64,000 bases of DNA from IMGVR_UViG_3300042319_002138:1-64000, one strand, 5' to 3'; positions 5,450 to 24,654 are shown, counted from the stretch's first letter. Numbers and translations are program-made. Notes: generated from the letters alone by a model not told the origin.

Positions 5450-5478
5450 TAATAAGAAAATTAAAAAATAAAAATAAA

Positions 5479-5865: not shown

Positions 5866-5881
5866 ATTATTTTAATTATTT

Positions 5882-6277
5882 ATGGCACAAAATTTCTTCA
5901 TAAAGAAAAATTCAGAATTACCGATTTTACAAATGAAGGTAATTAATGATGGTCGTAATGATTACAAAAAGATATTTGATAATCTTGAGAATGCTGCGAT
6001 TACTTTTTCTATGAAGGAAGTTGATTGTAGTACTTGTAAATTTAAAGTATTCAACAAACCTGCTTTAATCATACCAGTAGAAAATGAGGCTTGTGGAGTG
6101 ACAGAATATTATATTGGTTATAAGTTTAGTAAAAATGAAACTAATATGGCAGGAACATTTAAAGCAGAATTTAAAATAGATTTTTTAGATGATGGTTGTT
6201 CCTTAATTGTTCCCATATACGAAGATTTATATGTAACAATAGCCGACAGTTTTGTAAATTCAAAAATAGTATGTTAA
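5882..6277 (+). CDS. Hypothetical structural protein (BppU/Ig-like baseplate-type fold possible)
   Basis: FFIKKN..LP.L....YKF...ET...G.F.AEFKI pattern resembles phage baseplate-upper-like domains. Confidence 0.45.
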   Translation: MAQNFFIKKNSELPILQMKVINDGRNDYKKIFDNLENAAITFSMKEVDCSTCKFKVFNKPALIIPVENEACGVTEYYIGYKFSKNETNMAGTFKAEFKIDFLDDGCSLIVPIYEDLYVTIADSFVNSKIVC

Positions 6278-6280
6278 AAT

Positions 6281-6317
6281 AAAGAATCCCCCAATCACTT
6301 GGGGGATTTTCTTTTTT
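6281..6317. terminator. Bidirectional intrinsic terminator
   Basis: aatcccccaa-tcac-ttgggggatt hairpin with A/T flanks, between convergent genes. Confidence 0.8.
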
Positions 6318-8799
6318 AGGACTTACTTTCAGTACCACTGATTATTTCAACAGTAACGTCATTTTTAGCATAACCAATTTTAATGGTATCCCCTTCTTTG
6401 ACATCACCCTCCATCATTCTTTCAGCGATAGGGTCTTCAACGTACTTTTGGATTGCTCTGTTAAGAGGTCTAGCTCCATACTTCTCATCGTAACCAATTT
6501 CAACTAAATGGTCTCTCATTTTTGTAGAAATCTTGATGTTGTAACCCATTTCAGCCATTCTATCTCTTAAATCGTTAAGAGGTAACTCAACAATATTCTT
6601 GATATCTTCTTTTCCTAAAGATTGGAAGATGATGATATCATCAAGACGGTTCAAAAATTCAGGTGAAAAAGCTTTCTTAACTGACTCTTCGATTACGTTG
6701 TTACGGATATCTTCCAAGTTTTCAATTTTAGCTTTTGTACCAAAACCAACACCTGTACCAAAATCCTGTAGTTTTCTAGCCCCTACGTTAGATGTCATGA
6801 TAATTAAAGTATTCTTAAAGTCTACTTTTCTACCAAGACCATCCGTTAAGTGACCCTCATCCAATACTTGGAGTAGGATGTTGAATACATCAGGGTGTGC
6901 CTTCTCAATCTCATCTAACAAGATAACTGAATAAGGTTTTCTTCTAACTTTCTCAGTCAACTGACCACCTTCTTCATAACCAACATACCCTGGAGGAGCT
7001 CCCACTAATTTAGAGATTGCGTGTTTTTCCATGTATTCAGACATATCCACTCTAATCATAGAATCTGCAGTACCAAACATTTCTTTGGCCAACATTTTAG
7101 CTAAGTGAGTTTTACCTACACCAGTTGGTCCTAAGAAAATAAATGAACCGATTGGTTTTCCTTGTTGTTTAATCCCCATTCTATTTCTACGAATAGCTTT
7201 TGAGATTTGCTCAACAGCAGAATCTTGACCGATTACCTTACTTGTTATTTCTTTGGACATGTTTTTGAGTCTTATCAACTCGTCCTGACCAACCTTAGTC
7301 ACAGGAATACCTGTAATCAATGAAACAACTTTAGCAACATCTTCTTCAGTAATTTCTTTTCTTTCTGAATTGAGATTACTAGTCCAAACGCTTGTCTCTA
7401 TATCCAAACTTTCTTTTAGTTTTCTTTCTTCATCACGAAGACGTGCAGCTTCTTCATATCTTTGAGCTTTAACCACATCAATTTTAGCCTTATCGATATC
7501 AACAATCTTGTTCTCTAAGTCTAAAATAACTTGTGGTGGTTTTGCGTGAACTTGTGACCTAGCACCTACCTCATCCATGATATCGATAGCTTTATCAGGT
7601 TGTTCACGGTCACTGATATATCTATCAGCTAATTTAACACAAGCTTCAATTGCCTCATCAGTATATCTTACTTTGTGGTGGTCCTCATACTTATCCTTAA
7701 TGTTTTTAAGAATAATTAATGTTTCCTCAGAAGATGGTGGTTCAACCATTACAGTTTGGAATCTTCTAGTTAATGCACCGTCTTTCTCAAAGTTTTCACG
7801 ATACTCATCAAGAGTTGTTGCCCCAATACATTGAATTTCACCACGTGCTAAAGCTGGCTTCAAGATGTTTGATGCGTCAAGAGAACCAGAAGCGTTACCA
7901 GCACCAACCATAGTATGGATTTCATCAATGAAAAGAATAACGTCATCAACCTTTTCCAATTCTTGCATAATACCTTTTAAACGTTCCTCAAATTGGCCAC
8001 GGTATTTAGTACCTGCAACTAATAGAGCCATGTCAAGGGATACTACTCTCGTATTGAACAAAATTCTAGGACATTTTTTCTGAACAATTTTTAGAGCTAA
8101 CCCTTCTACAATCGCTGTTTTACCAACACCTGGTTCACCAATCAAGATTGGGTTGTTTTTCTTTCTTCTACTCAATACCTGAGCAACTCTTTCAACTTCA
8201 TCGTCTCTACCAATAATTGGGTCAATCCCACCTTTTGCAGCAATATCGGTAATATCTCTACCAAAATTATCCAGAATAGGTGTGTTGGATTTAGTACTGC
8301 CCTTCTTACCTTTTAAACCATCCATTTCATCGTAATCGTCTGTAATTCCACTCATGTTAATTTGTTTTTTTATTTCTATTAATCTTTGTTTAAAACTTTT
8401 ATAATCAAGACCCTGATGTTCCAAAACTTTAGTACAATCAAGTTCTCTATTTTTTAAAATTGCTAACATTAGGTGTTCTTCCCCAATGTGTTTATCCCCT
8501 AATTTATCTGATTCCAGTTCTGCTATGTTTAAGACAGATTTAGAACTTTTACTCAAAGGTAGTAATTTTATTTCATATTTCGGGTTTTTAATTTTTAATC
8601 TTATGTAAGATTCGACTTTTGAAGTTAATTCGTCAACATCTAAACCCATATTTCTTATAACATCAGTAACACTATTGTTGTTATCAAAAAAAAGAGCTAA
8701 AACTATATGGTCTGGACTAATATCACTCCCACCTAATCTAACGGACTCTCTAAATGATTCCTGTATTATTAATCTAATTTTTTCTCCTATGGGTTTCAT
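6316..8799 (-). CDS. clpC: ATP-dependent Clp protease ATP-binding subunit ClpC
   Basis: Clp N repeats, two AAA+ modules ([16 protein letters not shown]; IDEIH, LDEIEK), UVR middle domain ([11 protein letters not shown]), VGF ClpP-docking loop (GVGFG), YGARPL. Confidence 0.93.
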
Positions 8800-8807
8800 T
8801 CACACAA

Positions 8808-8838
8808 CAAGTATAATTACTTTTTTTAAAATAGACAA
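8808..8838 (-). promoter_or_regulatory. Bacteroidota-type sigma-A-like promoter for clpC
   Basis: Minus strand TTG-N20-TATACTTG, one mismatch to TAnnTTTG. Confidence 0.4.
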
Positions 8839-8925
8839 CTGAATTGACTTTTTTTAACAAGATAATTAAAGTTAACACAGTTCTCAATAAAAGAATTATA
8901 ACAATTTATTTATTATATTTAAAGT

Positions 8926-9141
8926 ATGTATAAAGAATTAACAATTATTTTTAAAAATAACCCCAATAGTGATGATGATTTTGATGGGGGTACACATTCA
9001 GTAACCTACGAAAAGGCAGCTTTTCAATTAGTAGGTGATTATATGGTATTACATTTACAAAAAGAAGATGATGCTGGAAATGGTTATGTAGAAGGCCACA
9101 TATTACCAATAAATTCAATTAAATCTTATAAAGGGGTTTAA
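8926..9141 (+). CDS. Hypothetical protein
   Basis: 71-aa ORF; upstream TTGACT-N17-TAAAGT at 8844-8872. Confidence 0.6.
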   Translation: MYKELTIIFKNNPNSDDDFDGGTHSVTYEKAAFQLVGDYMVLHLQKEDDAGNGYVEGHILPINSIKSYKGV

Positions 9142-9142
9142 T

Positions 9143-9442
9143 ATGGCGGTAGTAAAAAAAATAGAAAAAGAAGATGGTGTTGTTGAGTGTTTAATTGACT
9201 CATCAAACATTATAATGTCTGAATACGACGAAACTAAAAGTACTTTAGCTATTACATTTAAAGCGGGTACAAAATACCTTTATAAAGAAGTTTTAAAAAG
9301 GGATTATGTTCGTTTTGAAGTTTCTGAAAGCCAAGGAGAAGTTTTTAATAAAACTTTACGTAAATATGTATACGAAAAATTAGATAATATAGACGTTTCT
9401 CCTTTAAAAGAACAAATTAAGGAAATAAAAGGTATTGTTTAA
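9143..9442 (+). CDS. KTSC domain protein
   Basis: SSNI..EYD....L.ITFK.G..YLY..V....Y..F..SESQG..FN pattern. Confidence 0.8.
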   Translation: MAVVKKIEKEDGVVECLIDSSNIIMSEYDETKSTLAITFKAGTKYLYKEVLKRDYVRFEVSESQGEVFNKTLRKYVYEKLDNIDVSPLKEQIKEIKGIV

Positions 9443-9771
9443 TTTTTTGTGTAAGATACTACATCTACAATATCCATACATGGAGGGTTAACATCTGACT
9501 TACTTTTCGCAATAAAAACAAAAACAGGTCCTTCAGTGTAAACAATATATTTAAGTTCATCTGATATACCACCGTAACCTAAAAATTTAATTGTAATCTC
9601 TTCAAACCCTAGTTCGGATAATTTTCTTGATACTAGGGTTTTTACACTTTCCCCCGTACAATCAATGGAACTTAAAATATTTACAATTTCATTTGCAGTA
9701 TATTCCTGAATTCTTATTTCAGTTAATCTTTGTAACTGTGATTCTGTTAGTATAATATTTTTTCTTCTCAT
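9439..9771 (-). CDS. Hypothetical protein with IILTESQL leader
   Basis: Start reassigned to ATG 9771 (MRRKNIILTESQLQRL), just after the upstream gene's stop. Confidence 0.65.
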   Translation of the reverse strand: MRRKNIILTESQLQRLTEIRIQEYTANEIVNILSSIDCTGESVKTLVSRKLSELGFEEITIKFLGYGGISDELKYIVYTEGPVFVFIAKSKSDVNPPCMDIVDVVSYTKN

Positions 9772-9775
9772 ATTA

Positions 9776-10357
9776 TTAATTTTCATTGTAGTCTTCATCA
9801 TAATCTTCATCATAGTCAGAAGGGTCAAATCCAGATTCTCTTCTTTCAAAATCTTCTACATCTAACCCAGCTTCATAAGCTCTACCTTCTTCAAAGGCTT
9901 TATAATAAGTTGCTTCAACCCCCTCTTCGTAACCTTTTTGATATCCGTCTTGGATAGCTTCGTCATAACCTTCGTCATAACCTTTCTCGTATTTTTCTTC
10001 TAACTTATCTTCCATATCCCGTTTAGCTTCAGAATATCCATCACGATGACCCATATCATACCCTTGGGATTCACCTTCACTATAACCATTTTGACTCCCT
10101 GTATCTATACCCCTTTCATAAGCATTATAACCAAATTCATATAATGATTTAATTAAACTATCTAATTGTATAGTGTTTAAACCAAGATTATAAATAGAAT
10201 TAACTAAAGGACTAGTTTCGGTATTAAAAATATAAAAACCAAAATCATCAAATCTAGATAGTTTATTAGCTATTTCAGATTTTGAGGTTGGTTCAGATTC
10301 CCTAACCCAATCAAAATCGTTGTCTTCTTTTAATATTTTCTTAATTGTATTTCTCAT
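9776..10357 (-). CDS. Hypothetical protein with GYxxG repeats and KKILKE..DFDW leader
   Basis: Yae1/FliH-like GYxxG repeats; preceded by ATATTTAT on the minus strand. Confidence 0.65.
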   Translation of the reverse strand: MRNTIKKILKEDNDFDWVRESEPTSKSEIANKLSRFDDFGFYIFNTETSPLVNSIYNLGLNTIQLDSLIKSLYEFGYNAYERGIDTGSQNGYSEGESQGYDMGHRDGYSEAKRDMEDKLEEKYEKGYDEGYDEAIQDGYQKGYEEGVEATYYKAFEEGRAYEAGLDVEDFERRESGFDPSDYDEDYDEDYNEN

Positions 10358-10366
10358 TATCATTTA

Positions 10367-10386
10367 ATAAATATCATGATATTTAT
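10367..10386. promoter_or_regulatory. Back-to-back ATATTTAT putative late promoters (perfect 20-bp palindrome)
   Basis: ataaatatca|tgatatttat between divergent genes, one motif facing each gene. Confidence 0.65.
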
Positions 10387-10390
10387 GAAT

Positions 10391-11608
10391 ATGAATATAA
10401 ATGAAAAAGAAGTCGAAAAAGCTAATAGAAAAATTGACTTGGGTGGTTTTACAATGAATGATGAATTAAATCCTAAAATTTGGGATGAAAATCAAAAAAT
10501 GAAACCCGAAGTTAAAAAAAATCTTTTAAAAATAGCTGATGATTATTTTGAGAGTTTAAAAATACCTGGGGTTGACATTGAAGATGTTTGTATTACAGGT
10601 AGTTTGGCTAATTATAATTGGTCAAAATACTCTGACGTTGATTTACATATTATAATCGATTATAAAGATGTCCCTGTTGATGAAGATTTAGTACAAGATT
10701 TTTTTAAATCTAAAAGCTCTAATTGGAATAAGGAACATGACGTTAAAATTTATGATTATGACGTTGAATTATATGTACAAGATATAAATGAATCACACCA
10801 CTCAACAGGAGTTTATTCAATATTAAATAATGAATGGGTAACAAAACCACAAAACAAGAAAATTAATTTTAACGATAAATCTGTAAAAGATAAGGCTAAC
10901 GGAATTATGGACCGTATTGAAGATTTATATGATGAGTTAAATGATGGTGATTATGATGTTGCTGTTAAAGGTGTTGAAAAATTAACGGAAAAAATTAAAA
11001 AAATGCGTCAATCAGGTTTAGAGTCTGGTGGTGAATTTTCAGTAGAAAATATTGTTTTCAAAGTTTTACGTAGAAATGGAATGTTGGATAGATTGTATGA
11101 TATTAAGACAGTTGCTTACGATAAATCGGTAACACTAGAATCAATGCGTGAGTCAAAAAAAATTGATTCCCTTTTAGAATCAATTGAAGATGACCCATTT
11201 AAATGGATAAAAGATGTAGAAACAAAAACATTAATAGAAAAACAACCATATAGAAGTGCTGAATATGATATAGTTGGTGAATATTTTAAAAAAGAAAAAC
11301 CCGTTTATAAGGGTTGGTCTGTTATTTGGGACGGTTTTCAAGGAGTTGTTGAATGGAGAAATCAAGATGTACCACATTTATTTATTTTTGCAACACCTTA
11401 TTGGGATGGTGCTGATAATGTACCAGTAAATTATGATGAAAATTACGGTGATGATTACGGACATTTAGGATTTGTAAGTATTCCTGAATTTGAGTATAAA
11501 GAAGACTTAATCAATTGGATAGAAAACGATTATTTTAAAGGGGTGTATAAATTAATTATAGATTATACGGGCCCTTTAGTCGAATCAGTAGAAGATTTTA
11601 AACGGTAA
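10391..11608 (+). CDS. Pol-beta superfamily nucleotidyltransferase with C-terminal extra domain
   Basis: GS..NY....SDVDLH motif plus later VELY; start is 10385 or 10391. Confidence 0.75.
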   Translation: MNINEKEVEKANRKIDLGGFTMNDELNPKIWDENQKMKPEVKKNLLKIADDYFESLKIPGVDIEDVCITGSLANYNWSKYSDVDLHIIIDYKDVPVDEDLVQDFFKSKSSNWNKEHDVKIYDYDVELYVQDINESHHSTGVYSILNNEWVTKPQNKKINFNDKSVKDKANGIMDRIEDLYDELNDGDYDVAVKGVEKLTEKIKKMRQSGLESGGEFSVENIVFKVLRRNGMLDRLYDIKTVAYDKSVTLESMRESKKIDSLLESIEDDPFKWIKDVETKTLIEKQPYRSAEYDIVGEYFKKEKPVYKGWSVIWDGFQGVVEWRNQDVPHLFIFATPYWDGADNVPVNYDENYGDDYGHLGFVSIPEFEYKEDLINWIENDYFKGVYKLIIDYTGPLVESVEDFKR

Positions 11609-11656
11609 TTGGTGGTTTATTGAAGATTAAACATATTTATATAGAAAAAGAAAATT

Positions 11657-11944
11657 ATGGATAGTTATTATGCATTACACTTACCTTCGGGAGCTACATA
11701 TACAGCATACACGTATTATCAAATATATGTTAACGCTGGAGCTACTTTAGTATATAAAGGTGTTACATTACCCTCACCTTCGGCTGGACCTATAGTATTA
11801 AATCTAACTGTTAATTCTACTACAGATATAGCTGGTAGTTCGGGAATTGCTTTATTAGGTAAGAAAAAACCAGAAGCTTTTGCAGAAGGACCTGCTGGAC
11901 AAAACGGTCTTAACACGGATGGTACTTGGAATATAAGAGGATAA
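11657..11944 (+). CDS. Hypothetical (probable virion) protein
   Basis: 95-aa ORF after the motif at 11633. Confidence 0.6.
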   Translation: MDSYYALHLPSGATYTAYTYYQIYVNAGATLVYKGVTLPSPSAGPIVLNLTVNSTTDIAGSSGIALLGKKKPEAFAEGPAGQNGLNTDGTWNIRG

Positions 11945-11957
11945 AAAAAAATAGAAG

Positions 11958-14234
11958 ATGAATAAAAAATTATTAAATAGAATGTTGGAACTCTCTAACA
12001 TTAAACCAGTGATTAAAGAAGAAAAGATGAGTCTATCTAATTTTGAATTGGTTAAAGAATCTGTAAACGGTAAAATATATGCTGTTGTAAGAGAACAAAA
12101 TAAATATTATATAAAGAACGCTGATTCTAAAAATAATATCAATGAATCTGATTTTGATTACATTGGTGGTATAGTTAATAAGGGAAAAAAATCTTTTTAT
12201 TCTTATGAAGAGGCGGTTAAACATTTAAATTTAATGTTTGAAGAAATTAATAATCACTATAATGTAGATAATGTTAATTTGTTAGAATCAGATGTTTTAA
12301 ATGAGAAAAAATTTATTTTAAAATTAAAAAACAAAAAAACTGAACCAAAAGCTGAACCAAAAGTTGATAAAGGTGGTTTTGACTTTGGTGGAGACTCTGA
12401 AGAAAAGGAAACTTCTGATAAAGGTGGTTTTGACTTTGGTGGAGGTGATGATACTGAAGATACGGGGGATAGTGAATTTGACTTCGGTGGAGATGAAGAT
12501 ACTGAAGATACTGGTGATGATTCATTTGACTTCGGTGATGATACTGAAGATACAGGAGACGGTGAATTTGATTTTGGTGGAGACGATGAGGGAGTTGATT
12601 CCGAAGAAGACGATACTGATGTAGAAGAATTTGGTGATGATGATATCAAAGATATTCAAAGTACCACAGGTAAATTGGGTCAACAAATTAGAGATGTCGA
12701 GGATTTATCTTCTGATATGCAAAAATGGGTTGCTAAATCAGTTTTATCTGCTATGGATTTAGAAAATATGGATTCTGAAGATAAAAAAGATATTATTCGT
12801 ACAATAAAAAAGAAATCACAAGAAGAACCTGAAGAATCTGATGAAGAGTCTTTTGATTTTGGTGATGAGGAACCTGTAGAGGAATCTTCTTATATGTCTT
12901 ATATGGACGATAAATCATGTACACATTGTAATGGTTCGGGTTATGATGAATTCACTGATGAAACTTGTGAATGGTGTGAGGGTGAAGGAAAATTTATAAA
13001 TCCTAATGACACAAGTAATTATCGTAGATATATGGGTGATGGTACACACGATTCTTACATGAAAGAGAAAAAAGAAAGTTATTCAGATTCAGAATTAGAT
13101 AATTGGTTGCTGGATATGGAAATGGCTGGATTTGTTTCAACACCTTCTTACGAATCATACATGGGAGAAGACAACCCTCATATTGGTGGTGATGAGAATA
13201 TGGTTGATGGTGAATTATTATTAGATTATGATGATGAAAATTTATATGGTTTAAACCTAAATATGAGAAATAATCCTAATTTAGAGTATTCAGAAAATAA
13301 TAACATGAATCGTGGATATGGTAATTATATGTCTGATGTAACAGATAAATTTGAGACATATGAACAAGAAATTGCTTACCAAGATTTGTCGGATATGGCA
13401 TCGGAATATGGTTTTACACTAAGTCTTTGTCACGCTGATAAAACAGAAGACCCTGAAGAATCTACAATCTATTTTGATATCAAAGACGGTAGTAAAAAAT
13501 TATTAAAGGCTAGAATTAACTCTATTGGTAGTCTTGAAATTGGTACAATGAGAGGTAGACATTTTATTGGTGAACCAGTTGACTCTTTATCAGATTTTGA
13601 CGAAACTTTTGACGAAGAAGGAAAATTAAAAGATATGGGACCCCAAAGAGAAAAAGCACCTGAAAAACCTGACCGTGGAACTGAAACAATTCCCGGAACA
13701 CCTACTAAAACACCTGATAGAGAACGTCCTTCTAGAAGACCGTTTAATCCTCCCCCACATATTACGCCAGGTGAGGAACCAGGTCCAAAAGCTAGAGGTA
13801 GAAGATTAAATAATTATGACCCTACAATGGCTCCGGCTCCAGCAAAACAACCTGAAAAACCTGACCGTGGAACTGAGACAGTTCCTGGAACGCCGACTAA
13901 AACGCCTGATAAGGATAGACCATCTAGAAGGCCTTTTAATCCACCTCCTCACATTACGCCAGGAGAAGAACCAGGTCCAAAAGCTAGAGGTAGAAGAAGT
14001 TATATGAGTTATATGGGGGATGAAGATAAAACATCTAAGCCATCTCATGACAAACCTCGAAGACCTGGCCGTAATCCATTTGAAAAACCTATGGGGGATG
14101 AAGATAAAACATCTAAGCCATCTCATCCCAAACCTCGAAGACCTGGCCGTAATCCATTTGAAAAACCTCAAAGACCTGACAGTAATCCATTCAAAAGGCC
14201 TAATAATAATGAAGGTGACGTTAAGTTCTCATAA
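11958..14234 (+). CDS. Large acidic low-complexity protein (probable internal head protein) with DnaJ-type Zn finger
   Basis: FDFGG repeats, two CxxCxGxG, YM[SG]D repeats, Pro/Arg C-terminal repeats. Confidence 0.6.
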   Translation: MNKKLLNRMLELSNIKPVIKEEKMSLSNFELVKESVNGKIYAVVREQNKYYIKNADSKNNINESDFDYIGGIVNKGKKSFYSYEEAVKHLNLMFEEINNHYNVDNVNLLESDVLNEKKFILKLKNKKTEPKAEPKVDKGGFDFGGDSEEKETSDKGGFDFGGGDDTEDTGDSEFDFGGDEDTEDTGDDSFDFGDDTEDTGDGEFDFGGDDEGVDSEEDDTDVEEFGDDDIKDIQSTTGKLGQQIRDVEDLSSDMQKWVAKSVLSAMDLENMDSEDKKDIIRTIKKKSQEEPEESDEESFDFGDEEPVEESSYMSYMDDKSCTHCNGSGYDEFTDETCEWCEGEGKFINPNDTSNYRRYMGDGTHDSYMKEKKESYSDSELDNWLLDMEMAGFVSTPSYESYMGEDNPHIGGDENMVDGELLLDYDDENLYGLNLNMRNNPNLEYSENNNMNRGYGNYMSDVTDKFETYEQEIAYQDLSDMASEYGFTLSLCHADKTEDPEESTIYFDIKDGSKKLLKARINSIGSLEIGTMRGRHFIGEPVDSLSDFDETFDEEGKLKDMGPQREKAPEKPDRGTETIPGTPTKTPDRERPSRRPFNPPPHITPGEEPGPKARGRRLNNYDPTMAPAPAKQPEKPDRGTETVPGTPTKTPDKDRPSRRPFNPPPHITPGEEPGPKARGRRSYMSYMGDEDKTSKPSHDKPRRPGRNPFEKPMGDEDKTSKPSHPKPRRPGRNPFEKPQRPDSNPFKRPNNNEGDVKFS
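13659..13997 (+). repeat. Imperfect ~147-bp intragenic duplication (13659-13805 / 13851-13997)
   Basis: Encodes PEKPDRGTET.PGTPTKTPD..RPSRRPFNPPPHITPGEEPGPKARGRR twice, with mostly synonymous differences. Confidence 0.9.
14013..14168 (+). repeat. 78-bp near-perfect tandem duplication
   Basis: MGDEDKTSKPSH.KPRRPGRNPFEKP x2, differing at one codon. Confidence 0.9.
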
Positions 14235-14251
14235 ATAAGAAATAAAATAAT

Positions 14252-14284
14252 AAAAAACATAGTCTAAAAAGGCTATGTTTTTTT
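14252..14284 (+). terminator. Intrinsic terminator
   Basis: aaaaaacatagtc-taaaaa-ggctatgttttttt. Confidence 0.75.
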
Positions 14285-14310
14285 ATGCTCAAGACTAATA
14301 TTTATAGTAT

Positions 14311-14718
14311 ATGTATTTAATTTATATAAACAGAATTGGTAAAACATTTAAAGGTGAACATATGTTTGAATTTTTATTCTCAGACTCAACTGAATGGGAA
14401 TGGGATGAATCTTGGTATGAATCGTCTGTTATTACCGAAACAAGAGAATTAGCCCCCGACGAAAATATCATTAAACTAGTTGGTTCACTTAAAACTGACG
14501 AATTTGATTTGGAATTAGTTCAAGAAGATGGTGTACGTGATATTTATAATGCTGTAGAAGGTATTATAGCTTTAGGTTGGGAAAAACTACAAGATGATGA
14601 AGATTATCCAGAACAAAGAAGAATATTCCGTTTTGGGGACACAAAAAAATCTGTTGATGAACAACTATACGAGTATGACCTTGTATTAAAATATAAAGAA
14701 AACAAAGTAACAAAATGA
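14311..14718 (+). CDS. Hypothetical protein
   Basis: 135-aa ORF, ATG 5 nt after ATATTTAT. Confidence 0.7.
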   Translation: MYLIYINRIGKTFKGEHMFEFLFSDSTEWEWDESWYESSVITETRELAPDENIIKLVGSLKTDEFDLELVQEDGVRDIYNAVEGIIALGWEKLQDDEDYPEQRRIFRFGDTKKSVDEQLYEYDLVLKYKENKVTK

Positions 14719-16658
14719 TGAGAAAAAAATATTTTTTACGAGAAGCTGATGAGATGGATAAGGAAGCTGTACTTAAATCTGCCGAAGAAAGTTTGGAACA
14801 AGAGAAACAAAATTTAGAAAATAATAAAAAATCTTTAGAGGTAAATAAAGAAACTTTAAAGGCATCTGAAGTTGACGTAGATACTAAATTATCAGCAATT
14901 CAGGGTAATAATAAAGTAATAGCACAAGGTAATAAAGCAGAAGACGTTACCGACCCAAAAACACAAGCAGATGCTTTAACAAGACAAAAACCAGTTCTTA
15001 CAAAACAAGTGAATGGTTTAAAACAACAAAATAAAGAAAAAGAACAAGCCATAAAAAATCAGGAAGAATCTATAAAAAACCAAGAAGATTATATTAAACA
15101 AAAAGAAGATTATATAAAAGACATGGAAAGTGGTATGCGTGAAAGTAGAATTATAAAAGCAAAAGATTTTAAATCTATTGTTGAAAACTATTCCAAAATT
15201 GATTTGTCTGAATCAGATATTATTAATATCATTGTAGAGACTCAAAATCCAATAATGACAAAAGCTAAGATTGTTGAGTCGATACAAAATAAATTAATAT
15301 TTGAAGCGGATATGAATAGAGACGTAAACAGTAGTTTTGAAGGTGGTACAAATGAGTATTCTGAATTGTTAGGTTCAGATTTAGCTAAACAAATGGCTAA
15401 TCAATCTTTTGAAGAAATAGCTAGAGCTATTAGACAAAAAACAGGTAAAGAAAGAGTTACTTTTGATGATGTTCAACAATTAATGTCTAGTTCATTGATG
15501 AATGCGGCTAAAGAAGAATACGCTTACGGTATCGACAGATTAGAAACAAAGGCTGTTGAAATGATTCGTAAACAATTCAACATCCCTGAAGGTGCTGTTG
15601 AATTTGATGCGACCATAACAGGTGTCCCACAAAAAGCGTTAGGTTTACCTAGTGGTACCCCACAGGCAACTATAAACCAAATGTCTAGACAATTGGGTGT
15701 TAAGATTGGTGATATACAAAGAGAAGGTCTTAAATTTGATAAAGGTACTAGTCCTGTTCCACAAGGAAAAACTGAGGTACAAATGAAACCTAAAATTAAA
15801 AGAAGAAAGTACACTAACGCTATGATGCACGGTGCGGCTAGAAAGTCACAAAACATTCACCACATGGACGACCAATTAAGACAGGAGAATCCTAGATTGA
15901 GTCAAAACTACGCTAATCTTATGGCTGCAAATGACGCTTCTTACTGGATGATGAATGATGAAGACATTAAAACACAGGGTAGACAAGGTATTCACGCAGG
16001 TAATGTTAGAGTTAAATTATCTGACCAACCTAATGGAGTTCCTAAAATTATTGCACAAGGTGTGGTATTCCCAGTACTTTTACATGAATTGGCTAAAGGT
16101 GTTATTGAATTAATGTCTTTATGGTCCCTACCTGTTGATGCTGAAGAAAGAAAATATGTCCTAGATAAAACTGATAATTTAGATAATGAAACTAATGATA
16201 TTAGATTAGGTACTATCTTTTGGGAAAAATTTGTAAGACAAATACCAACTGATAATCAAGAAGTTATTTCTTTGACATGGAATATGATGCAAGAACTTTC
16301 AGATGATGAGTTTAATAGTATTATTGAGGGATTATCAAATGATAGAACAGATTCACAAATGAAAGTTCAAAGAATAGCTGAAGAAGCGGCTGAAGAGTTA
16401 AGACGTGAAGCTTCCGACGATACTTTTGGTATGTACGGTGATGATGATGATAAAGATGGTGGTGATGTAGAAACTCCTGATGAGGATGAAGAAGAAACTA
16501 ACCCTACTGTTTTAGGTGGTGAAAAAGAGGGTCCTGAAGAACCTAAAGACCTTAATGATATGACTGATGATGAACTTAGAGGTTTAATGAAGTCAGCTAT
16601 TGAAGATGAGGACTATGAATTTGCTTCAGAAATTAGAGATATCTTAAAAAATAGATAA
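14715..16658 (+). CDS. Coiled-coil protein with C-terminal UVR (UvrB/C) motif
   Basis: N-terminal coiled coil; LLHELAKG; C-terminal LMKSAIEDEDYEFASEIRD. Confidence 0.6.
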   Translation: MMRKKYFLREADEMDKEAVLKSAEESLEQEKQNLENNKKSLEVNKETLKASEVDVDTKLSAIQGNNKVIAQGNKAEDVTDPKTQADALTRQKPVLTKQVNGLKQQNKEKEQAIKNQEESIKNQEDYIKQKEDYIKDMESGMRESRIIKAKDFKSIVENYSKIDLSESDIINIIVETQNPIMTKAKIVESIQNKLIFEADMNRDVNSSFEGGTNEYSELLGSDLAKQMANQSFEEIARAIRQKTGKERVTFDDVQQLMSSSLMNAAKEEYAYGIDRLETKAVEMIRKQFNIPEGAVEFDATITGVPQKALGLPSGTPQATINQMSRQLGVKIGDIQREGLKFDKGTSPVPQGKTEVQMKPKIKRRKYTNAMMHGAARKSQNIHHMDDQLRQENPRLSQNYANLMAANDASYWMMNDEDIKTQGRQGIHAGNVRVKLSDQPNGVPKIIAQGVVFPVLLHELAKGVIELMSLWSLPVDAEERKYVLDKTDNLDNETNDIRLGTIFWEKFVRQIPTDNQEVISLTWNMMQELSDDEFNSIIEGLSNDRTDSQMKVQRIAEEAAEELRREASDDTFGMYGDDDDKDGGDVETPDEDEEETNPTVLGGEKEGPEEPKDLNDMTDDELRGLMKSAIEDEDYEFASEIRDILKNR

Positions 16659-16732: not shown

Positions 16733-16755
16733 CATGCCTGATGATATTTATTGGC

Positions 16756-18594
16756 ATGAGTTTAAGTAAAGGACAAATGATGTATGAAATAGGTAAGTGT
16801 TTAACAGACCCTATTTATGCTATAGAAAATTACCTTGAGACAGAGGATAGAACACAAAAGGGATTTGTTGCCTTTAAATTATTTCCTAGACAAAAGGAGT
16901 TAATTGAGGCATATAAAAATCATCATCACAATATAGTGATGAAACCAAGACAGGCAGGTATATCAACTACAACCGCGGCTTATTTAGCAATTGTAACCGC
17001 TTTAGCGTCAAGTAAAAGTACCCAAAAAATTCTTATTGCGGCAAATAAACAAGAAACAGCGAAAGAATTCTTAAAAAAGATTAAAGATTTTACAATGCAG
17101 TTACCTGGTTGGATGGATGTTCACAGACCAGCGGGTTCTGATAGTTGGTTTAACCCCGAAAAGAACTCTAGTTCACATTACAAATTATGGAATGGTTCTG
17201 AAGTAAAAGCTGTTGCTTCTTCAAAAGATGCACTTAGAGGTTATACACCGTCATTCATTGTTGTCGATGAAGCCGCCTTTATCGAAGGTCATAGGGGTGA
17301 GGAATTTTATACTGCCGCACAACCGTCACTTTCAACTGGTGGTAGGTCAATTCTTATTTCAACACCAAACGGACATGACCCTTTATACCATAAAGCTTAT
17401 GTAACGGCTGAAAGAGGTAAAAATAATTTTAACATAATTTCGATGAAGTGGTATGAAGACCCTCGTTATAATGGTAAAAATGATGGTTCTGGGATGTCTT
17501 GGGTTCTTAGGGATGAGAAGAATAACGATATTATAGAAAATATTGAGGACCCAAAAAGTGGATTTGGCCCTGATGCTGTTGTCCCACAAGAAAAATGGCC
17601 TGAAATGGCTGAAAAGGGGTATGTACCAAGGTCAAAATGGTTTGACGATATGTGTGCACAACTTAATCACAACGCAAGGTCAATAGCACAAGAGTTATTA
17701 TGTTCTTTTGTTGGTTCAGGTGATAGTGTAATTGATGATAAATACAAATCTAGACAAGAAAGAGATAATGTTAGAGAACCAATAAGAAAAGAGTGGGTTG
17801 ATGGTAACATGTGGATATGGGAAGACCCTATACCTGAACATGAATATATTTTGTCTGCTGACCCTTCTTCAGGTTCTTCTGATGACTTTGCAGGTATTTG
17901 TGTATGGGATTATACAACAGGTAATCAAGTAGCTGAATACCACGGTAAAGTAGCACCCGATGTTTTAGGTGAGATAGCTAACTATTATGGTGGTTCATAT
18001 GACGCATTTGTGGTTGTGGATATTACAGGTGGATGGGGTGCTTCTGTTGTATTAAAATTAATTGAATTAGGTTACCCTAAAAAAAGACTGTATTACGATG
18101 TTACCGTTGGTATTGATTCTGTTGAAAATAACAGAGCCTTACAAAAACACATGGATAGGGGTAAACTACCTGGGTTAAACTTTCAAAAAAATAGAAATAC
18201 CATAATCTCTAAATTAGAAGAGGCTATTAGATTGGATTCGTTTAAGATTCGTTCTAAAAGAATGTTAGCTGAAATAGAGACGTTTGTCTATATTAATGGT
18301 AGACCAGACCACATGAGAGGTTATCACGATGACTTATTAATGTGTATTGGTATGTGTTGTTTTGTGGCTATGACCTCTTTTAAAGATTTGGAAAAATCTA
18401 AAGGTCAGGCAAAGGCAATGATTAACAGTTGGTCTGTTGAGACTGGTACTATAGAAGAGAATCCAATTTTAAATGAAGTTATTGGTACAGGTTTTTATAC
18501 AGATAGTAGAAATAAAGATAATAATAGAATAACTACTGAACAAACTAAGGAATACTCTTGGTTATTTAGTGGGATGAAAGGATTTAAAAAATAA
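16756..18594 (+). CDS. terL: Terminase large subunit (T4 gp17-like)
   Basis: KPRQAGIST Walker A, IVVDEAAF Walker B, ISTPNG, nuclease ADPS and HDDL motifs; start moved to 16756. Confidence 0.93.
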   Translation: MSLSKGQMMYEIGKCLTDPIYAIENYLETEDRTQKGFVAFKLFPRQKELIEAYKNHHHNIVMKPRQAGISTTTAAYLAIVTALASSKSTQKILIAANKQETAKEFLKKIKDFTMQLPGWMDVHRPAGSDSWFNPEKNSSSHYKLWNGSEVKAVASSKDALRGYTPSFIVVDEAAFIEGHRGEEFYTAAQPSLSTGGRSILISTPNGHDPLYHKAYVTAERGKNNFNIISMKWYEDPRYNGKNDGSGMSWVLRDEKNNDIIENIEDPKSGFGPDAVVPQEKWPEMAEKGYVPRSKWFDDMCAQLNHNARSIAQELLCSFVGSGDSVIDDKYKSRQERDNVREPIRKEWVDGNMWIWEDPIPEHEYILSADPSSGSSDDFAGICVWDYTTGNQVAEYHGKVAPDVLGEIANYYGGSYDAFVVVDITGGWGASVVLKLIELGYPKKRLYYDVTVGIDSVENNRALQKHMDRGKLPGLNFQKNRNTIISKLEEAIRLDSFKIRSKRMLAEIETFVYINGRPDHMRGYHDDLLMCIGMCCFVAMTSFKDLEKSKGQAKAMINSWSVETGTIEENPILNEVIGTGFYTDSRNKDNNRITTEQTKEYSWLFSGMKGFKK

Positions 18595-18918: not shown

Positions 18919-20823
18919 ATGGCAGAAGAAAATAAAAATTTAACGGTATATCAAAAACTCTTTTACCTTTTTGGTCAAGGTAATGGTGGTATAAAAGCCA
19001 ATACCATATATAACAAATACGCTTTAGGTGATAGAGATTTAATTGTTACAAAGTCCAGAGAGGAGTTTGAGAAAGAAAAATTACAAAGACAACAACAAAA
19101 ATACTTAGAAGGTCAATGGGCTAAAGTAGATAGTGAATTATATCAAAAAGCGATTTACTATGAAACTTCTAGGGTTGCCTCTTATATGGATTACGAGGCA
19201 ATGGAGTTTACCCCTGAAATTGCTGTCGCTTTAGATATTATGTCAGAAGAATCTTGTACATTAAACGAACAAGGTAAAATTTTAAGTGTTTATTCTGATT
19301 CATCTAGAATTAAAAAAGTTTTAGAAGATTTATTCTTTAATGTAATGGACATCCACTCAAATTTACCGATGTGGACTAGAAATACATGTAAATACGGTGA
19401 TAACTTTCTTTATTTAAAAATAGATTACAGGGATGGTATTGTTGGTTCTTCTCAATTAACAAATATTGATATTGAAAGAAAAGAAACAGGCGTATTCCCT
19501 TTTCAAGCTCAAAAAGAAGAAACAAAAGAAGAAACACAGAAAAAACAAGTTAAATTCTTTTGGAGAGATAAAACCATGGAGTTTAACGCTTGGGAAATAG
19601 CTCATTTTAGACTTTTAGGTGATGATAGAAAATTACCTTATGGTACTTCGGTATTAGAGAAAGTAAGGAGAATATGGAAACAACTTCTTTTAGCAGAAGA
19701 CGCTATGTTAGTTTATCGTGTAACTAGAGCACCTGAAAGAAGAGTATTTAAAGTTTATGTAGGTAACATTGATGATAATGATGTTGAAGCTTACGTACAA
19801 AAAGTTGCTAATAAATTTAAAAGAACACAAAAAGCTGATAGTCAAACAGGTCAGGTAGATTTAAGATATAATACTTTGGCAGTTGACCAAGATTACTTTG
19901 TACCTGTAAGAGATGCTAACGCTTCTAGTCCAATTGAAACGTTGGCGGGTGCGTCTAACCTAGACCAAATTGCAGATATTCAATTTATCCAAAGAAAAAT
20001 GGTTACAGCATTAAGAGTACCAAAAACTTTCCTAGGTTTTGATGATGTCGTTGGTGAGGGTGGTAATTTAGCTATGTTAGATATTAGATTTGCTAGGACC
20101 ATAAATAGAATTCAACAGGCTATGGTTCAAGAGTTAAATAAAATAGCTATTATCCATTTATATATTTTAGGTTTCCACGATGAGTTAAATAATTTTAAAC
20201 TAGTCCTTAACAATCCATCTACTCAAGGTGAAGTTCTTAAAGTTGAACAATGGAAAGAAAAAGTTTTGTTGTATAAAGACCTTGTTAGTGCTGTTGATGG
20301 TGGAATTGCTCCAACATCACACACATGGGCTAAAAAAAATATCTTTAATTGGTCTAATGATGAAATCTTAGAAGATTTAGAACAACAAAGACTTGAAAGA
20401 GCGGCAGCTAAGGAACTTGAAAATACTGCTGAAATTATCAAAAACACAGGATTCTTTAAGAACGTTGATAAACTTTATGGTGAAATTCCTGTTAAATCAG
20501 ATGAAACGGCTGGGACTGAAACTGGTGGTGAAGAAACTGGAGGCTTTGGAGGCGGTGAAGAAGCTGGAGGCTTTGGAGGTTTAGGAGGTGGTGAAGAAGC
20601 TGGAGGCTTTGGAGGTTTCGGAGGCGGTGAAGAAGCTGGAGGCGGTGAAGAAGCTGGAGGAGGTGAAGAAGTTGGTGGTTTTGGTGAAAGCTTTAGAGGT
20701 GATGAGAATGTAATTAATAAATTATTACTTGAAGGTAGAAAGAAAAATGAAGATATTTTAATGATGACTAAGGGTATAGATTTGTTACTTAATGAAGGTG
20801 ATGATGAAATACTTGGTAGCTAA
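18919..20823 (+). CDS. gp20: Portal protein (T4 gp20-like)
   Basis: EDAMLVYRVTRAPERRVF.V.VGN, QDYFVP.R, ALRVP motifs; position in the head module. Confidence 0.92.
   Translation: MAEENKNLTVYQKLFYLFGQGNGGIKANTIYNKYALGDRDLIVTKSREEFEKEKLQRQQQKYLEGQWAKVDSELYQKAIYYETSRVASYMDYEAMEFTPEIAVALDIMSEESCTLNEQGKILSVYSDSSRIKKVLEDLFFNVMDIHSNLPMWTRNTCKYGDNFLYLKIDYRDGIVGSSQLTNIDIERKETGVFPFQAQKEETKEETQKKQVKFFWRDKTMEFNAWEIAHFRLLGDDRKLPYGTSVLEKVRRIWKQLLLAEDAMLVYRVTRAPERRVFKVYVGNIDDNDVEAYVQKVANKFKRTQKADSQTGQVDLRYNTLAVDQDYFVPVRDANASSPIETLAGASNLDQIADIQFIQRKMVTALRVPKTFLGFDDVVGEGGNLAMLDIRFARTINRIQQAMVQELNKIAIIHLYILGFHDELNNFKLVLNNPSTQGEVLKVEQWKEKVLLYKDLVSAVDGGIAPTSHTWAKKNIFNWSNDEILEDLEQQRLERAAAKELENTAEIIKNTGFFKNVDKLYGEIPVKSDETAGTETGGEETGGFGGGEEAGGFGGLGGGEEAGGFGGFGGGEEAGGGEEAGGGEEVGGFGESFRGDENVINKLLLEGRKKNEDILMMTKGIDLLLNEGDDEILGS
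20520..20690 (+). repeat. Gly/Glu tandem repeats (GGEEAGGFGG) in portal C-terminus
   Basis: Repeated ggtgaagaagctggagg units. Confidence 0.85.
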
Positions 20824-23886: not shown

Positions 23887-24654
23887 ATGAAAATATTAAA
23901 ACCAGGTGAAGAAGGTACAGGTTTTTTAGTTGAATATGATTCAGGGTATATTAAACCTGAATTAACTTGCAAAGATGGCGTTTGTTCAAACGTTAATTTA
24001 ATTAGAGAATTTAAGTCTGGAATGAATTTCACTATGGACGGGCCTTTACCTGAAAAAATTGAAATATATGCCGTACTACAAAAGTGGGGTGTAGAAAATA
24101 AAAACGGTAGGGTCTACCCTAAAGATATCTTAGAAAGAGAAGCTAAAAGATACCAAGAGTTTATCAAAATGGGTACTTCTTTGGGTGAATTAAACCACCC
24201 AGAATCATCTATTATTGATGGTGAAAGGGTATCACATATGGTAACTGAATTATGGTGGGAAGGCAAAACTCTAATGGGTACATTAGAATTAGATACAACA
24301 CCAGGATATCATAAAATGGGAATTATTTCATCAGTTGGTGATAAAGTTCTTAATATGATTAGAAAAGGTTGGACCGTAGGTATCTCATCTAGAGGTGTAG
24401 GTTCACTTAAAAATGAAGGTGGTAAGAATGTAGTTCAAGATGACTTTGAGTTAATCTGTTGGGATATTGTAACTTCACCATCAACTCCAGGTTCTTGGAT
24501 TTCTTCTGATAAGAATGACCTTAAACCTTATACGGAATCTACTAATAAAAAAATGGATTTATTAAATAGTAGTTCAAATATAATAGCAGATAACCTATAT
24601 TTATCTGAAAATGAATCTAAATTATTAAACAATTTAAATAAATTTTTACTATAA
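23887..24654 (+). CDS. gp21: Prohead core protease (T4 gp21-like)
   Basis: NKNGRVYP, LGELNHP, GISSRGVGS, WDIVTSPSTPG motifs. Confidence 0.92.
   Translation: MKILKPGEEGTGFLVEYDSGYIKPELTCKDGVCSNVNLIREFKSGMNFTMDGPLPEKIEIYAVLQKWGVENKNGRVYPKDILEREAKRYQEFIKMGTSLGELNHPESSIIDGERVSHMVTELWWEGKTLMGTLELDTTPGYHKMGIISSVGDKVLNMIRKGWTVGISSRGVGSLKNEGGKNVVQDDFELICWDIVTSPSTPGSWISSDKNDLKPYTESTNKKMDLLNSSSNIIADNLYLSENESKLLNNLNKFLL

What the first reader, a model, noticed from the sequence alone, without database searches (positions are those of the whole stretch)
6316..16658. Phage ClpC plus a UVR-motif protein beside terminase: possible phage adaptor-unfoldase pair
Seen: an intact ClpC with UVR M-domain and VGF loop, and no ClpP in the window. 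The 647-aa gene immediately upstream of terminase ends in an acidic linker plus a UVR motif (~16575-16650). Known: UVR coiled coils mediate head-to-head contacts, and ClpC is controlled through its M-domain; the ClpC-associated protein McsA carries a UVR motif. Inference: the late protein recruits or activates phage or host ClpC(P) for head assembly or scaffold turnover, or redirects host proteolysis. Its HELAK segment resembles a degenerate HExxH.
Basis: partly seen in the sequence, partly recalled or inferred. Interest (0 to 1): 0.62.

Follow-up and report, generated by a model that had tools for sequence, protein, structure and literature searches.

The report
Phage ClpC and a UVR-tailed head-module protein
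A jumbo phage encodes its own ClpC/ClpP protease, and the unknown protein just upstream of terminase really does end in a UVR-like helical hairpin, but comparison with relatives does not show that this protein and ClpC work as a pair; a small UVR protein is the better candidate ClpC partner.

Summary
Window 6316-8799(-) is an intact ClpC with Clp_N, two AAA modules, an M-domain UVR motif and a GVGFG loop. The 647-aa gene at 14715-16658(+), directly upstream of TerL, ends in an acidic linker and a UVR-like helical hairpin. That Pfam UVR hit is weak (19.7 bits against a 21.5 cut-off; 25 bits in the six-frame scan).

- ClpP is absent from the window but present in the same 226-kb phage record at about 86 kb.
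- The 647-aa protein belongs to a large unnamed family (1,865 cluster representatives) that sits just upstream of TerL. ClpC lies 4-7 kb upstream in both sampled clades.
- The tail was probably gained once, in one sub-lineage. It drifts away from the UVR consensus in most relatives, while the ClpC M-domain stays constant. The sister clade has no tail at all.
- A complex prediction gave no verdict.
- A conserved small UVR protein lies at about 213 kb here. In about half of the sampled sister-clade loci it is double-UVR and sits next to clpC. It is the better candidate ClpC partner.
- HELAK is not a zinc site: the His varies, whereas Glu and Lys are nearly invariant.

Best reading: a head-module accessory protein with a lineage-specific docking hairpin whose partner is unknown. 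ClpC remains a minority possibility.

The parts
6283..6310 (.). Bidirectional terminator-like hairpin (12 pairs) between the + strand gene ending at 6277 and the 3' end of clpC
6316..8799 (-). Phage ClpC, 827 aa: Clp_N N-domain, D1, M-domain, D2 and D2-small
7411..7512 (-). UVR motif of the ClpC M-domain (aa 430-463; core [11 protein letters not shown] at aa 448-458)
6739..6753 (-). GVGFG, the ClpP-docking-type loop in D2 (aa 683-687)
8926..9141 (+). 71-aa ORF divergent from clpC with no UVR motif. In about half of the sampled sister-clade loci this slot holds the small double-UVR protein
9143..9442 (+). KTSC-domain protein; it keeps the same position next to clpC in the sister clade
11958..14234 (+). 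758-aa acidic and proline-rich repeat protein with a CxxC...CxxC knuckle; conserved in position across the lineage
14311..14718 (+). 135-aa ORF overlapping the start of the 647-aa gene by 4 nt; no family hit
14715..16658 (+). The 647-aa protein (P0002), a member of a large unnamed phage family
14721..15131 (+). N-terminal antiparallel coiled-coil hairpin (aa 3-139); variable among relatives and absent from the sister clade
15306..16430 (+). Conserved core domain (aa 198-572); the model has pLDDT 93 and no significant structural relative
16083..16097 (+). HELAK (aa 457-461). Across the family E458 and K461 are nearly invariant, while H457 is conserved in only 119 of 148
16431..16550 (+). Disordered acidic linker (aa 573-612; 18 of 40 residues D or E; pLDDT below 50)
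16569..16655 (+). C-terminal UVR-like helical hairpin (aa 619-647)
16741..18594 (+). Large terminase subunit (T4-type N-domain)
18919..20823 (+). T4 gp20-type portal protein
23887..24654 (+). gp21-type prohead maturation protease; head maturation therefore already has its own protease
27752..29551 (+). gp23-type major capsid protein

Best explanation
The 647-aa gene is the local member of a large, so far unnamed family of phage proteins. Its roughly 375-aa core is an autonomous domain with an invariant polar cluster (R364, N368, E458, K461, D487, E492, W503). In this lineage of uncultured, T4-head-type jumbo phages the gene is fixed directly upstream of TerL, inside the head and packaging module.

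Inferred role: a head or packaging accessory protein, possibly carried in the capsid. The core would do the work by binding or catalysis. A flexible acidic C-terminal tail ending in a hydrophobic or amphipathic element would tether it to a partner.

In the window's sub-lineage that terminal element is a helical hairpin, probably gained once together with the N-terminal coiled coil. It probably started out UVR-like and has since drifted from that consensus in most relatives. It therefore most likely acts as a generic helical-hairpin docking or oligomerisation module rather than a dedicated ClpC M-domain ligand.

The phage's ClpC/ClpP is a separate core function of the lineage. Its most plausible UVR-type partner is the conserved small UVR protein (159 aa, at about 213 kb in this genome).

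Shown: gene order, family size, domain boundaries, tail distribution, and the presence of ClpC, ClpP and the small UVR protein. Inferred: the head-associated role, the docking function of the tail, and the partner assignments.
For: Family and position:
- The family has 192 word-search hits and 1,865 cluster representatives at E<=1e-3.
- It has no PHROG hit. Pfam hits only the UVR tail and nothing in the core.
- TerL follows the homologue in 60 of 60 second-scan loci with at least 3 kb downstream, and in every first-scan locus that reaches far enough downstream.
- The surrounding genes are a T4-type head module: portal, gp21 protease and gp23 capsid protein.

Domain structure:
- The core model has pLDDT 93, the linker is disordered, and the terminal hairpin has pLDDT about 90.
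- Sister-clade homologues (390-431 aa) lack both the coiled coil and the hairpin. They still end in an acidic run followed by a short hydrophobic motif.

Tail history:
- On the quick tree the long and short forms are separated by one long branch.
- Canonical 'IRD' tails include the basal rows; degenerate tails form derived clades.
- Only 14 of 48 members hit the UVR model.
- Four long-clade relatives (two of them near-complete) and one sister-clade record show no UVR hit at the tail.
- The ClpC M-domain motif is constant in all clades.

The core as an independent module: it is also the N-terminal domain of 850-2,000-aa proteins, and one of these lies beside ART-PolyVal and SNF2 giant genes.

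The small UVR protein:
- It is conserved in three of four long-clade relatives searched.
- It is homologous to the clpC-adjacent double-UVR gene of the sister clade.
Against: - No direct evidence places the protein in proheads or virions, and no cultured phage carries it.
- UVR motifs are rare in this genome (three hits) and the other two belong to ClpC and a likely ClpC partner. The tail's resemblance may therefore be functional.
- ClpC is conserved in both clades and so remains a possible partner of the acidic tail in general.
- The fused relatives lie in non-structural, polyvalent-protein-type neighbourhoods, which could point to an injected effector rather than an assembly factor.
- Conserved gene order in T4-like modules is weak evidence of function.
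Confidence: 0.45

Rival explanations
1. In the window's sub-lineage the C-terminal UVR hairpin docks on the UVR-containing M-domain of phage ClpC, or on the small UVR protein bound to it. This would make the head-module protein a ClpC client, either as an adaptor that opens the resting state or as a substrate removed by ClpCP during head assembly or packaging.
For: - The tail scores as UVR. It is 52% identical over 21 aa to the UVR of the small phage protein.
- Only three UVR hits exist in 226 kb, and the other two are ClpC and that small protein.
- In the sister clade the small UVR gene sits right next to clpC, which suggests that UVR proteins are ClpC partners in these phages.
- The phage has a full-length ClpC with N-domain, M-domain and VGF loop, plus its own ClpP.
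- Literature: CLPF binds the CLPC N-domain and the UVR-bearing middle domain. Five UVR proteins are enriched in CLPC1 traps (PMC8889267; bioRxiv 10.64898/2026.08.05.743032). ClpC is held in a resting state by M-domain contacts (PMC12583610).
Against: - Most relatives have lost the UVR-defining residues (IRD becomes LGS, LTD or YQS), yet their ClpC M-domain and small UVR protein stay canonical.
- The sister clade keeps ClpC and the same gene order without any tail.
- L041 has an N-domain ClpC together with a tail-less homologue.
- The relative in L037 has a canonical tail but no clpC in the 8 kb upstream.
- clpC is on the opposite strand, about 6 kb and seven ORFs away.
Confidence: 0.27
2. The core is an enzyme or effector domain of the 'polyvalent protein' type. 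It would be packaged in the head and delivered with the DNA to act on host targets. The coiled coil and the hairpin would serve packaging or oligomerisation.
For: - 19 of the top 150 family representatives are multidomain proteins of more than 800 aa.
- One of them, 1,626 aa, lies between a 1,486-aa ART-PolyVal protein, an 1,830-aa SNF2 helicase and other giant ORFs.
- The core carries an invariant charged cluster of the kind expected at an active or binding site.
- The weak fold matches are mostly zincin peptidases.
Against: - Only two fused relatives were examined in context, and only one of them shows the polyvalent-type neighbourhood.
- The structural matches are below the noise level the tool quotes (best Z 5.5).
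- There is no metal-ligand set: the His is variable and a Lys replaces the second His.
- In this lineage the gene is single-domain and tied to TerL.
Confidence: 0.18
3. It is an unusually large small-terminase analogue. The coiled coil would give a ring oligomer and the C-terminal tail would bind TerL.
For: - It occupies the position of T4 gene 16, directly upstream of TerL.
- It has an N-terminal coiled coil.
- A flexible C-terminal tail is the usual TerL-binding element of small terminases (general knowledge, not tested here).
Against: - No terminase-small family hit was found.
- It is three to four times the usual size.
- The coiled coil is missing in the sister clade.
- The core also occurs in giant proteins far from any terminase.
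- A 135-aa ORF just upstream (14311-14718) is an equally good candidate by position.
Confidence: 0.08

Closest known systems
ClpC with its adaptors MecA and McsA/McsB (Firmicutes), and CLPF/CLPS1 with CLPC1 (chloroplasts)
   Same: The phage ClpC has the full class-I architecture with a UVR-bearing M-domain and a VGF loop, and the phage has its own ClpP. McsA and CLPF carry UVR motifs, and CLPF contacts the CLPC middle domain (bioRxiv 10.64898/2026.08.05.743032; PMC8889267). A protein with a C-terminal UVR hairpin therefore resembles a known kind of ClpC partner.
   Different: Pfam shows no similarity to MecA, McsA, McsB, ClpS or CLPF outside the 25-aa motif. The tail is not conserved as UVR in relatives. 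No binding has been shown. The 647-aa protein is a head-module gene with a large unrelated core.
UvrB/UvrC C-terminal UVR helical hairpin (Pfam PF02151)
   Same: Both are two short antiparallel helices with the x-x-[DE]-[FY]-E-x-A-A-x-[IL]-R-D pattern. The window protein reads EDYEFASEIRD.
   Different: The hit is below the curated cut-off in hmmscan. The motif sits at the end of a disordered acidic linker in a phage structural-module protein, with no nucleotide-excision-repair context.
C-terminal helix-turn-helix of phage scaffolding proteins such as P22 gp8, and acidic-tail docking peptides such as the SSB C-terminus and T7 gp2.5 (from general knowledge; not tested here)
   Same: Both have a flexible linker followed by a small terminal helical or hydrophobic element that tethers a protein to its partner during assembly.
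   Different: There is no sequence or demonstrated structural relation, and the partner here is unknown.
'Moraphages', large aquatic Bacteroidota phages (PMC12619734)
   Same: These are jumbo genomes with T4-type head genes. A Clp ATPase is among the 26 core orthologous groups, and nine genomes carry glutamine synthetase. The window has both a Clp ATPase and a glutamine-synthetase-like gene (22297-23376) in its head module.
   Different: Membership was not tested by sequence because those genomes were not at hand. The paper calls the ATPase ClpA and does not discuss UVR proteins or the TerL-adjacent family.
Polyvalent-protein domains of phages and conjugative elements (ART-PolyVal, MPTase-PolyVal and others)
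   Same: The core domain recurs as a module of giant multidomain proteins encoded beside ART-PolyVal and SNF2 giants. Its weak fold matches lean towards zincins.
   Different: There is no Pfam hit to any polyvalent-associated domain. The motif is HExxK rather than HExxH. In this lineage the protein stands alone and is tied to TerL.

Membership tests
ClpC (class I Clp/Hsp100 unfoldase) | N-terminal Clp_N repeat domain | tested here: met
   PF02861, 58 bits, two stretches. The main sister clade lacks it, with proteins of about 670 aa.
ClpC (class I Clp/Hsp100 unfoldase) | Two AAA+ modules with Walker A and B motifs and pore loops | tested here: met
   AAA and AAA_2 hits. [34 protein letters not shown] and GYVG were all located.
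ClpC (class I Clp/Hsp100 unfoldase) | Short coiled-coil M-domain carrying a UVR motif | tested here: met
   UVR at aa 430-463: 21.5 bits in hmmscan and 27.5 bits in the genome scan. The motif is conserved in all clades.
ClpC (class I Clp/Hsp100 unfoldase) | ClpP-docking (I/V/L)GF loop and a ClpP partner | tested here: met
   GVGFG at aa 683-687. Phage ClpP is at G000:85993-86517, 195 bits. ClpP is present in 8 of 10 relatives' records.
ClpC (class I Clp/Hsp100 unfoldase) | ATP-dependent unfolding and adaptor-dependent activation | not testable with these tools
   Needs biochemistry.
UVR domain (PF02151), tail of the 647-aa protein | Score at or above the curated cut-off of 21.5 bits | tested here: inconclusive
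   19.7 bits in hmmscan but 25 bits in the six-frame scan. 14 of 48 relatives hit at E<=0.01. Five related records (four long-clade, one sister-clade) show no tail hit at E<=0.1.
UVR domain (PF02151), tail of the 647-aa protein | Antiparallel two-helix hairpin | tested here: met
   The AF2 model has helices at aa 618-630 and 634-646 with pLDDT about 90. This is a prediction only.
ClpC adaptor (MecA, McsA or CLPF type) | Homology to a known adaptor family | tested here: not met
   No Pfam family other than UVR in the protein or its 48 relatives.
ClpC adaptor (MecA, McsA or CLPF type) | Physical binding to the ClpC N-domain or M-domain, with activation | tested here: inconclusive
   The complex prediction (ClpC 1-500 with tail 575-647) scored 0.28 against a mark of 0.34. 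The tool's verdict is 'no answer'.
ClpC adaptor (MecA, McsA or CLPF type) | The interaction element co-distributed with ClpC | tested here: not met
   ClpC was found in 31 of 32 and 25 of 25 loci with enough upstream sequence. The tail occurs only in the long clade and is UVR-like in only part of it.
Zincin metallopeptidase (HExxH) | HExxH plus a third metal ligand | tested here: not met
   The motif is HELAK. Lys is at the second-His position in 145 of 148, and the first His is Gln or Asn in 24 of 148.
Zincin metallopeptidase (HExxH) | Zincin fold | tested here: inconclusive
   The best match is Z 5.5 to M32 carboxypeptidase, rmsd 5.2 A over 178 aligned residues. The list is rich in zincins but lies below the tool's noise range. 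Foldseek against PDB found nothing. Atlas gave DA1-like at TM 0.33.
Small terminase subunit | Family hit or typical size, with a position upstream of TerL | tested here: not met
   The position fits, but there is no terminase-small hit in Pfam or PHROGs and the protein is 647 aa.

The most novel reading that the evidence does not exclude
These uncultured jumbo phages run a self-contained ClpC-ClpP machine with phage-specific UVR-motif partners: the small UVR protein, and in one sub-lineage the UVR hairpin on the TerL-adjacent protein. Unfoldase activity would thereby be coupled to capsid assembly or DNA packaging, for example by ClpC extracting or activating this protein at the portal or terminase vertex.
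Probability: 0.2. Interest if true: 0.75.

Novelty: new variant of a known kind. Interest (0 to 1): 0.5.

Why it matters
If the link were real, it would be the first case of a phage bringing its own ClpC together with its own UVR-type adaptors and aiming them at virion morphogenesis.

Even without that link, the locus gives three concrete and testable objects:
- a very large uncharacterised protein family fixed next to terminase in a widespread lineage of aquatic jumbo phages, with no detectable structural relative;
- a phage ClpC/ClpP pair that is a core feature of that lineage, including N-domain-less ClpC variants;
- a small phage-specific UVR protein family, encoded next to clpC in about half of the sampled sister-clade loci, which is a clean candidate regulator of ClpC.

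All three can be expressed and assayed with standard ClpC biochemistry.

Tried and rejected
- Complex prediction of ClpC 1-500 with the tail 575-647: score 0.28, below the mark of 0.34, and the controls were not run. The tool says this is neither support nor evidence against.
- Foldseek of the full-length and core models against PDB found nothing at E<=1e-3. BFVD returned only one uncharacterised homologue.
- The VIA second look gave a best Z of 3.6. The ESM Atlas feature search gave no usable hit. The PDB sequence-profile search gave nothing.
- PHROGs scans of the protein and of 60 distant relatives found no family.
- blastn of the region against phage records gave no match. tblastn found only two huge uncultured phages, LR745206 and LR756502. 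In LR745206 the neighbouring ORFs gave no terminase hit.
- The nearest cultured phages by portal, Microcystis phage Mel-JY01 and Flavobacterium phage immuto, have neither the family nor ClpC. That is consistent with joint presence but comes from only two genomes.
- I looked for co-variation between tail type and the ClpC M-domain and found none.
- I considered a link between the ClpC N-domain and the tail. The two traits follow the two clades, with L041 as an exception, so there are too few independent events to count.
- I considered the phage ClpP as the prohead protease and rejected it. A gp21-type protease sits in the head module, while ClpP lies about 62 kb away from that module at about 86 kb.
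- bS21, the hallmark of a related published phage group, is absent from this record.
- The promoter scan was at chance level.

Full report
**What is in the window.**

The window is the first 64 kb of a 226-kb IMG/VR virus record. GC is about 30%, and CheckV estimates it at about 70% complete, so this is a jumbo phage.

The ORF at 6316-8799(-) encodes an 827-aa ClpC.
- Pfam finds Clp_N, AAA, AAA_lid_9, a UVR motif at aa 430-463 (21.5 bits, exactly the curated cut-off), AAA_2 and ClpB_D2-small.
- PHROGs places it in phrog_4871 at 1.7e-264.
- Both Walker A and B pairs, both pore loops and a GVGFG loop (aa 683-687) are intact.
- A 12-pair bidirectional terminator-like hairpin lies just beyond its 3' end.

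The ORF at 14715-16658(+) encodes the 647-aa protein. It overlaps a 135-aa ORF by 4 nt and is followed after 82 nt by TerL at 16741-18594.

Downstream comes a T4-type head module: a gp20-type portal (18919-20823), a gp21-type prohead protease (23887-24654) and a gp23-type capsid protein (27752-29551).

**The UVR tail is real but weak.**

- hmmscan gives UVR at aa 620-642 with E=6.8e-4 and 19.7 bits, below the 21.5-bit cut-off.
- The six-frame scan of the whole record gives 25 bits. It lists only three UVR sites in 226 kb: ClpC, this tail, and a 159-aa ORF near 213 kb.
- 14 of 48 non-redundant relatives hit UVR on their own.
- AlphaFold2 (mean pLDDT 79.7) models five parts: a long N-terminal coiled-coil hairpin (aa 3-139), a poorly defined stretch, a confident core (aa 200-570), a disordered acidic linker (aa 570-609) and a confident two-helix hairpin (aa 618-646).

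One correction is needed. ClpP is absent from the window but present in the same record at 85993-86517(-) (195 bits). ClpP is also present in 8 of 10 long contigs of relatives.

**The protein family.**

- The word search found 192 relatives, all unnamed.
- Because Pfam and PHROGs left the core open, I spent the one large profile search. It found 1,865 cluster representatives at E<=1e-3 and 864 at E<=1e-30.
- None of 60 distant members hits a PHROG of known meaning.
- The nearest cultured phages by portal lack the family.
- The core alone folds with pLDDT 93 but has no significant structural relative. Foldseek against PDB finds nothing. The exhaustive VIA search gives a best Z of 5.5, below the tool's stated background. 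The second look gives Z 3.6.
- The weak list is rich in zincin peptidases (M32, DUF885, MATCAP, M3, M1, thermolysin, YbeY). Atlas returns DA1-like and Zincin_1 clusters at TM 0.33-0.44. This is a lead, not a finding.
- Column counts argue against a metal site. E458 (147 of 148) and K461 (145 of 148) are nearly invariant, as are R364, N368, G373, Y399, D487, E492, G499 and W503. H457 is Gln or Asn in 24 of 148.
- HELAK is thus part of a conserved polar site, but it is not a degenerate zinc-binding HExxH.
- Nineteen of the top 150 representatives are proteins of more than 800 aa. Most of these carry the core at the N-terminus, and a few carry it further in. One lies among ART-PolyVal and SNF2 giant genes. 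The core is therefore an autonomous module.

**Comparative test of the pairing hypothesis.**

Two scans of viral contigs gave 157 loci.
- The order clpC(-), several small genes, an acidic repeat protein, the family member, TerL, portal holds across a lineage whose TerL is only 41-45% identical to the window's.
- ClpC is found in 31 of 32 first-scan loci and 25 of 25 second-scan loci with at least 8 kb upstream. TerL follows in 60 of 60 second-scan loci with at least 3 kb downstream.
- This co-occurrence is complete but uninformative, because it is shared by every core gene of the module.
- L037 is the exception: it has a canonical tail but no clpC within the 8 kb upstream.

The informative variable is the tail.
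- The family splits into a long form (578-700 aa, with coiled coil and C-terminal hairpin) and a short form (390-431 aa, with neither). The short form ends in an acidic run followed by a short hydrophobic motif.
- On a quick maximum-likelihood tree the two forms are separated by one long branch. Canonical '...EDYEFASxIRDIL' tails include the basal rows of the long clade. Degenerate tails ('...GDMxLVRxLGSIL', '...DYxxVxxLTDIL') form derived clades.
- Four long-clade relatives (two of them near-complete) and one sister-clade record show no UVR hit at the tail.
- The ClpC M-domain motif (VVKAQ[RK]YE[ED]AA.LRDEE) is the same in all clades.
- The short-form clade mostly has an N-domain-less ClpC of about 670 aa. 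L041, however, combines an N-domain ClpC with a tail-less homologue.

The tail thus looks like a single lineage-specific acquisition under constraint as a helical hairpin, not as a UVR-specific ligand. The complex prediction gave no verdict and carries no weight either way.

**A better candidate ClpC partner.**

- The third UVR site belongs to a 159-aa protein at about G000:212867-213346, with UVR at 37-40 bits.
- It has orthologues in relatives of 143 and 192 aa, sharing a '...G.WEK..W.SPDG...' motif and a C-terminal UVR.
- In the short-form clade its homologue carries two tandem UVR motifs (127-166 aa). In at least 22 of 49 sampled sister-clade loci it lies roughly 30-230 nt from clpC, divergently transcribed, and is followed by a KTSC-domain gene. 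Pairwise BLASTP gives E=1e-7, including the non-UVR part.
- In the window that slot holds a 71-aa ORF without UVR (8926-9141) next to the same KTSC gene (9143-9442).
- The family has 33 word-search relatives, all metagenomic. A few are mislabelled UvrB.

By gene neighbourhood this small protein is the more likely UVR-type partner of phage ClpC.

The tail of the 647-aa protein is 52% identical over 21 aa to its UVR motif.

**Literature.**

- In chloroplasts the adaptor CLPF binds the CLPC N-domain and the UVR-bearing middle domain. Five UVR-domain proteins are strongly enriched in CLPC1 substrate traps (PMC8889267; bioRxiv 10.64898/2026.08.05.743032).
- Bacterial ClpC is kept in a resting state through M-domain contacts (PMC12583610).
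- That McsA carries a UVR motif is from my own knowledge.
- I found no paper on phage ClpC partners.
- A 2025 paper describes 'moraphages', large aquatic phages of Bacteroidota. A Clp ATPase is among their few core genes, and several carry glutamine synthetase (PMC12619734). The window has both traits (ClpC, and a GlnA-like gene at 22297-23376). Membership was not tested by sequence.

**Verdict.**

The best-supported reading (0.45) is that the 647-aa gene is a head or packaging-module accessory protein of a large unnamed family. Its conserved core carries the function. Its acidic tail with a terminal hairpin is a lineage-specific docking or oligomerisation device with an unidentified partner.

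The rivals are:
- a packaged polyvalent-type effector (about 0.18);
- a giant small-terminase analogue (about 0.08).

Shown: anatomy, family size, gene order, tail distribution, ClpP and the small UVR protein. Inferred: every functional statement.

**Limits.**

- All relatives are metagenomic contigs, and many are fragments.
- The tree is the quick version, because the careful search did not finish.
- The regex used undercounts diverged UVR motifs.
- Structural statements rest on predicted models.

Noticed in passing
Own genome G000:85993-86517(-), outside the window (L082:1483-2172): The phage encodes a 229-aa ClpP (195 bits), and its Ser/His/Asp motifs look intact by eye. Relatives carry one or two copies.
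   Followed up: yes
Own genome about G000:212867-213346(+) (L083:1129-1608); sister-clade examples L172:226-672, L173, L174: A conserved small UVR protein family specific to these phages. It has a single C-terminal UVR here. In about half of the sampled sister-clade loci it has two tandem UVRs and lies immediately next to clpC, divergently transcribed. It is a candidate ClpC regulator.
   Followed up: partly
G013 (the record behind L116; 294 kb, 100% complete): This complete relative has an N-domain-less ClpC but no ClpP hit and no small UVR protein. In some phages ClpC may therefore work with host ClpP or alone.
   Followed up: no
G007 (the record behind L040): 5014-6789(-) and 8468-9172(-): clpC is split at the first Walker A motif (aa about 222-230) into two open frames about 1.7 kb apart. 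This looks like an intein, intron or homing-element insertion.
   Followed up: no
L037 10775-13930 and 14276-17119; also L008, L014, L019 and L020: In several relatives TerL (break near aa 207) and portal (break near aa 107-113) each match in two pieces separated by more than 1 kb. This suggests mobile insertions in packaging genes.
   Followed up: no
window 11958-14234(+): A 758-aa protein that is very acidic in its first half and proline- and arginine-rich in its second. It has a CxxC...CxxC knuckle, GGFDFGG-type repeats, and a 78-bp unit repeated twice at 97% identity (14012-14168). Its position is conserved across the lineage but its sequence is highly variable.
   Followed up: no
window 22297-23376(+): A glutamine-synthetase-like gene (Gln-synt_N and Gln-synt_C) sits inside the head module, between portal and prohead protease. 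Glutamine synthetase is reported for 'moraphages' (PMC12619734).
   Followed up: partly
window 21643-22197(+): A 184-aa ORF with a Phage_holin_4_1 hit (E=1.2e-7) lies within the head gene block.
   Followed up: no
L176 (ENA contig, 37.7 kb): A 1,626-aa protein with the family's core at its N-terminus lies in a row of giant ORFs that includes an ART-PolyVal protein (1,486 aa) and an SNF2 helicase (1,830 aa). Methyltransferase genes follow.
   Followed up: partly
window 33639-33923(-); own genome about 219.0-219.5, 221.0-221.5 and 224.3-224.7 kb: The N-terminal domain of two fused family members (P0263, P0196) matches several paralogous places in the phage's own genome. This is an unexamined multi-copy domain.
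   Followed up: no
window 29647-30345(+): An endonuclease VII-like gene (phrog_1035) sits directly after the major capsid protein gene.
   Followed up: no
LR745206.1 and LR756502.1 (uncultured phages of 635 and 642 kb): Both huge phages carry an N-domain-less ClpC (61% identity) and a distant member of the 647-aa family. There the two genes are about 160-170 kb apart.
   Followed up: partly
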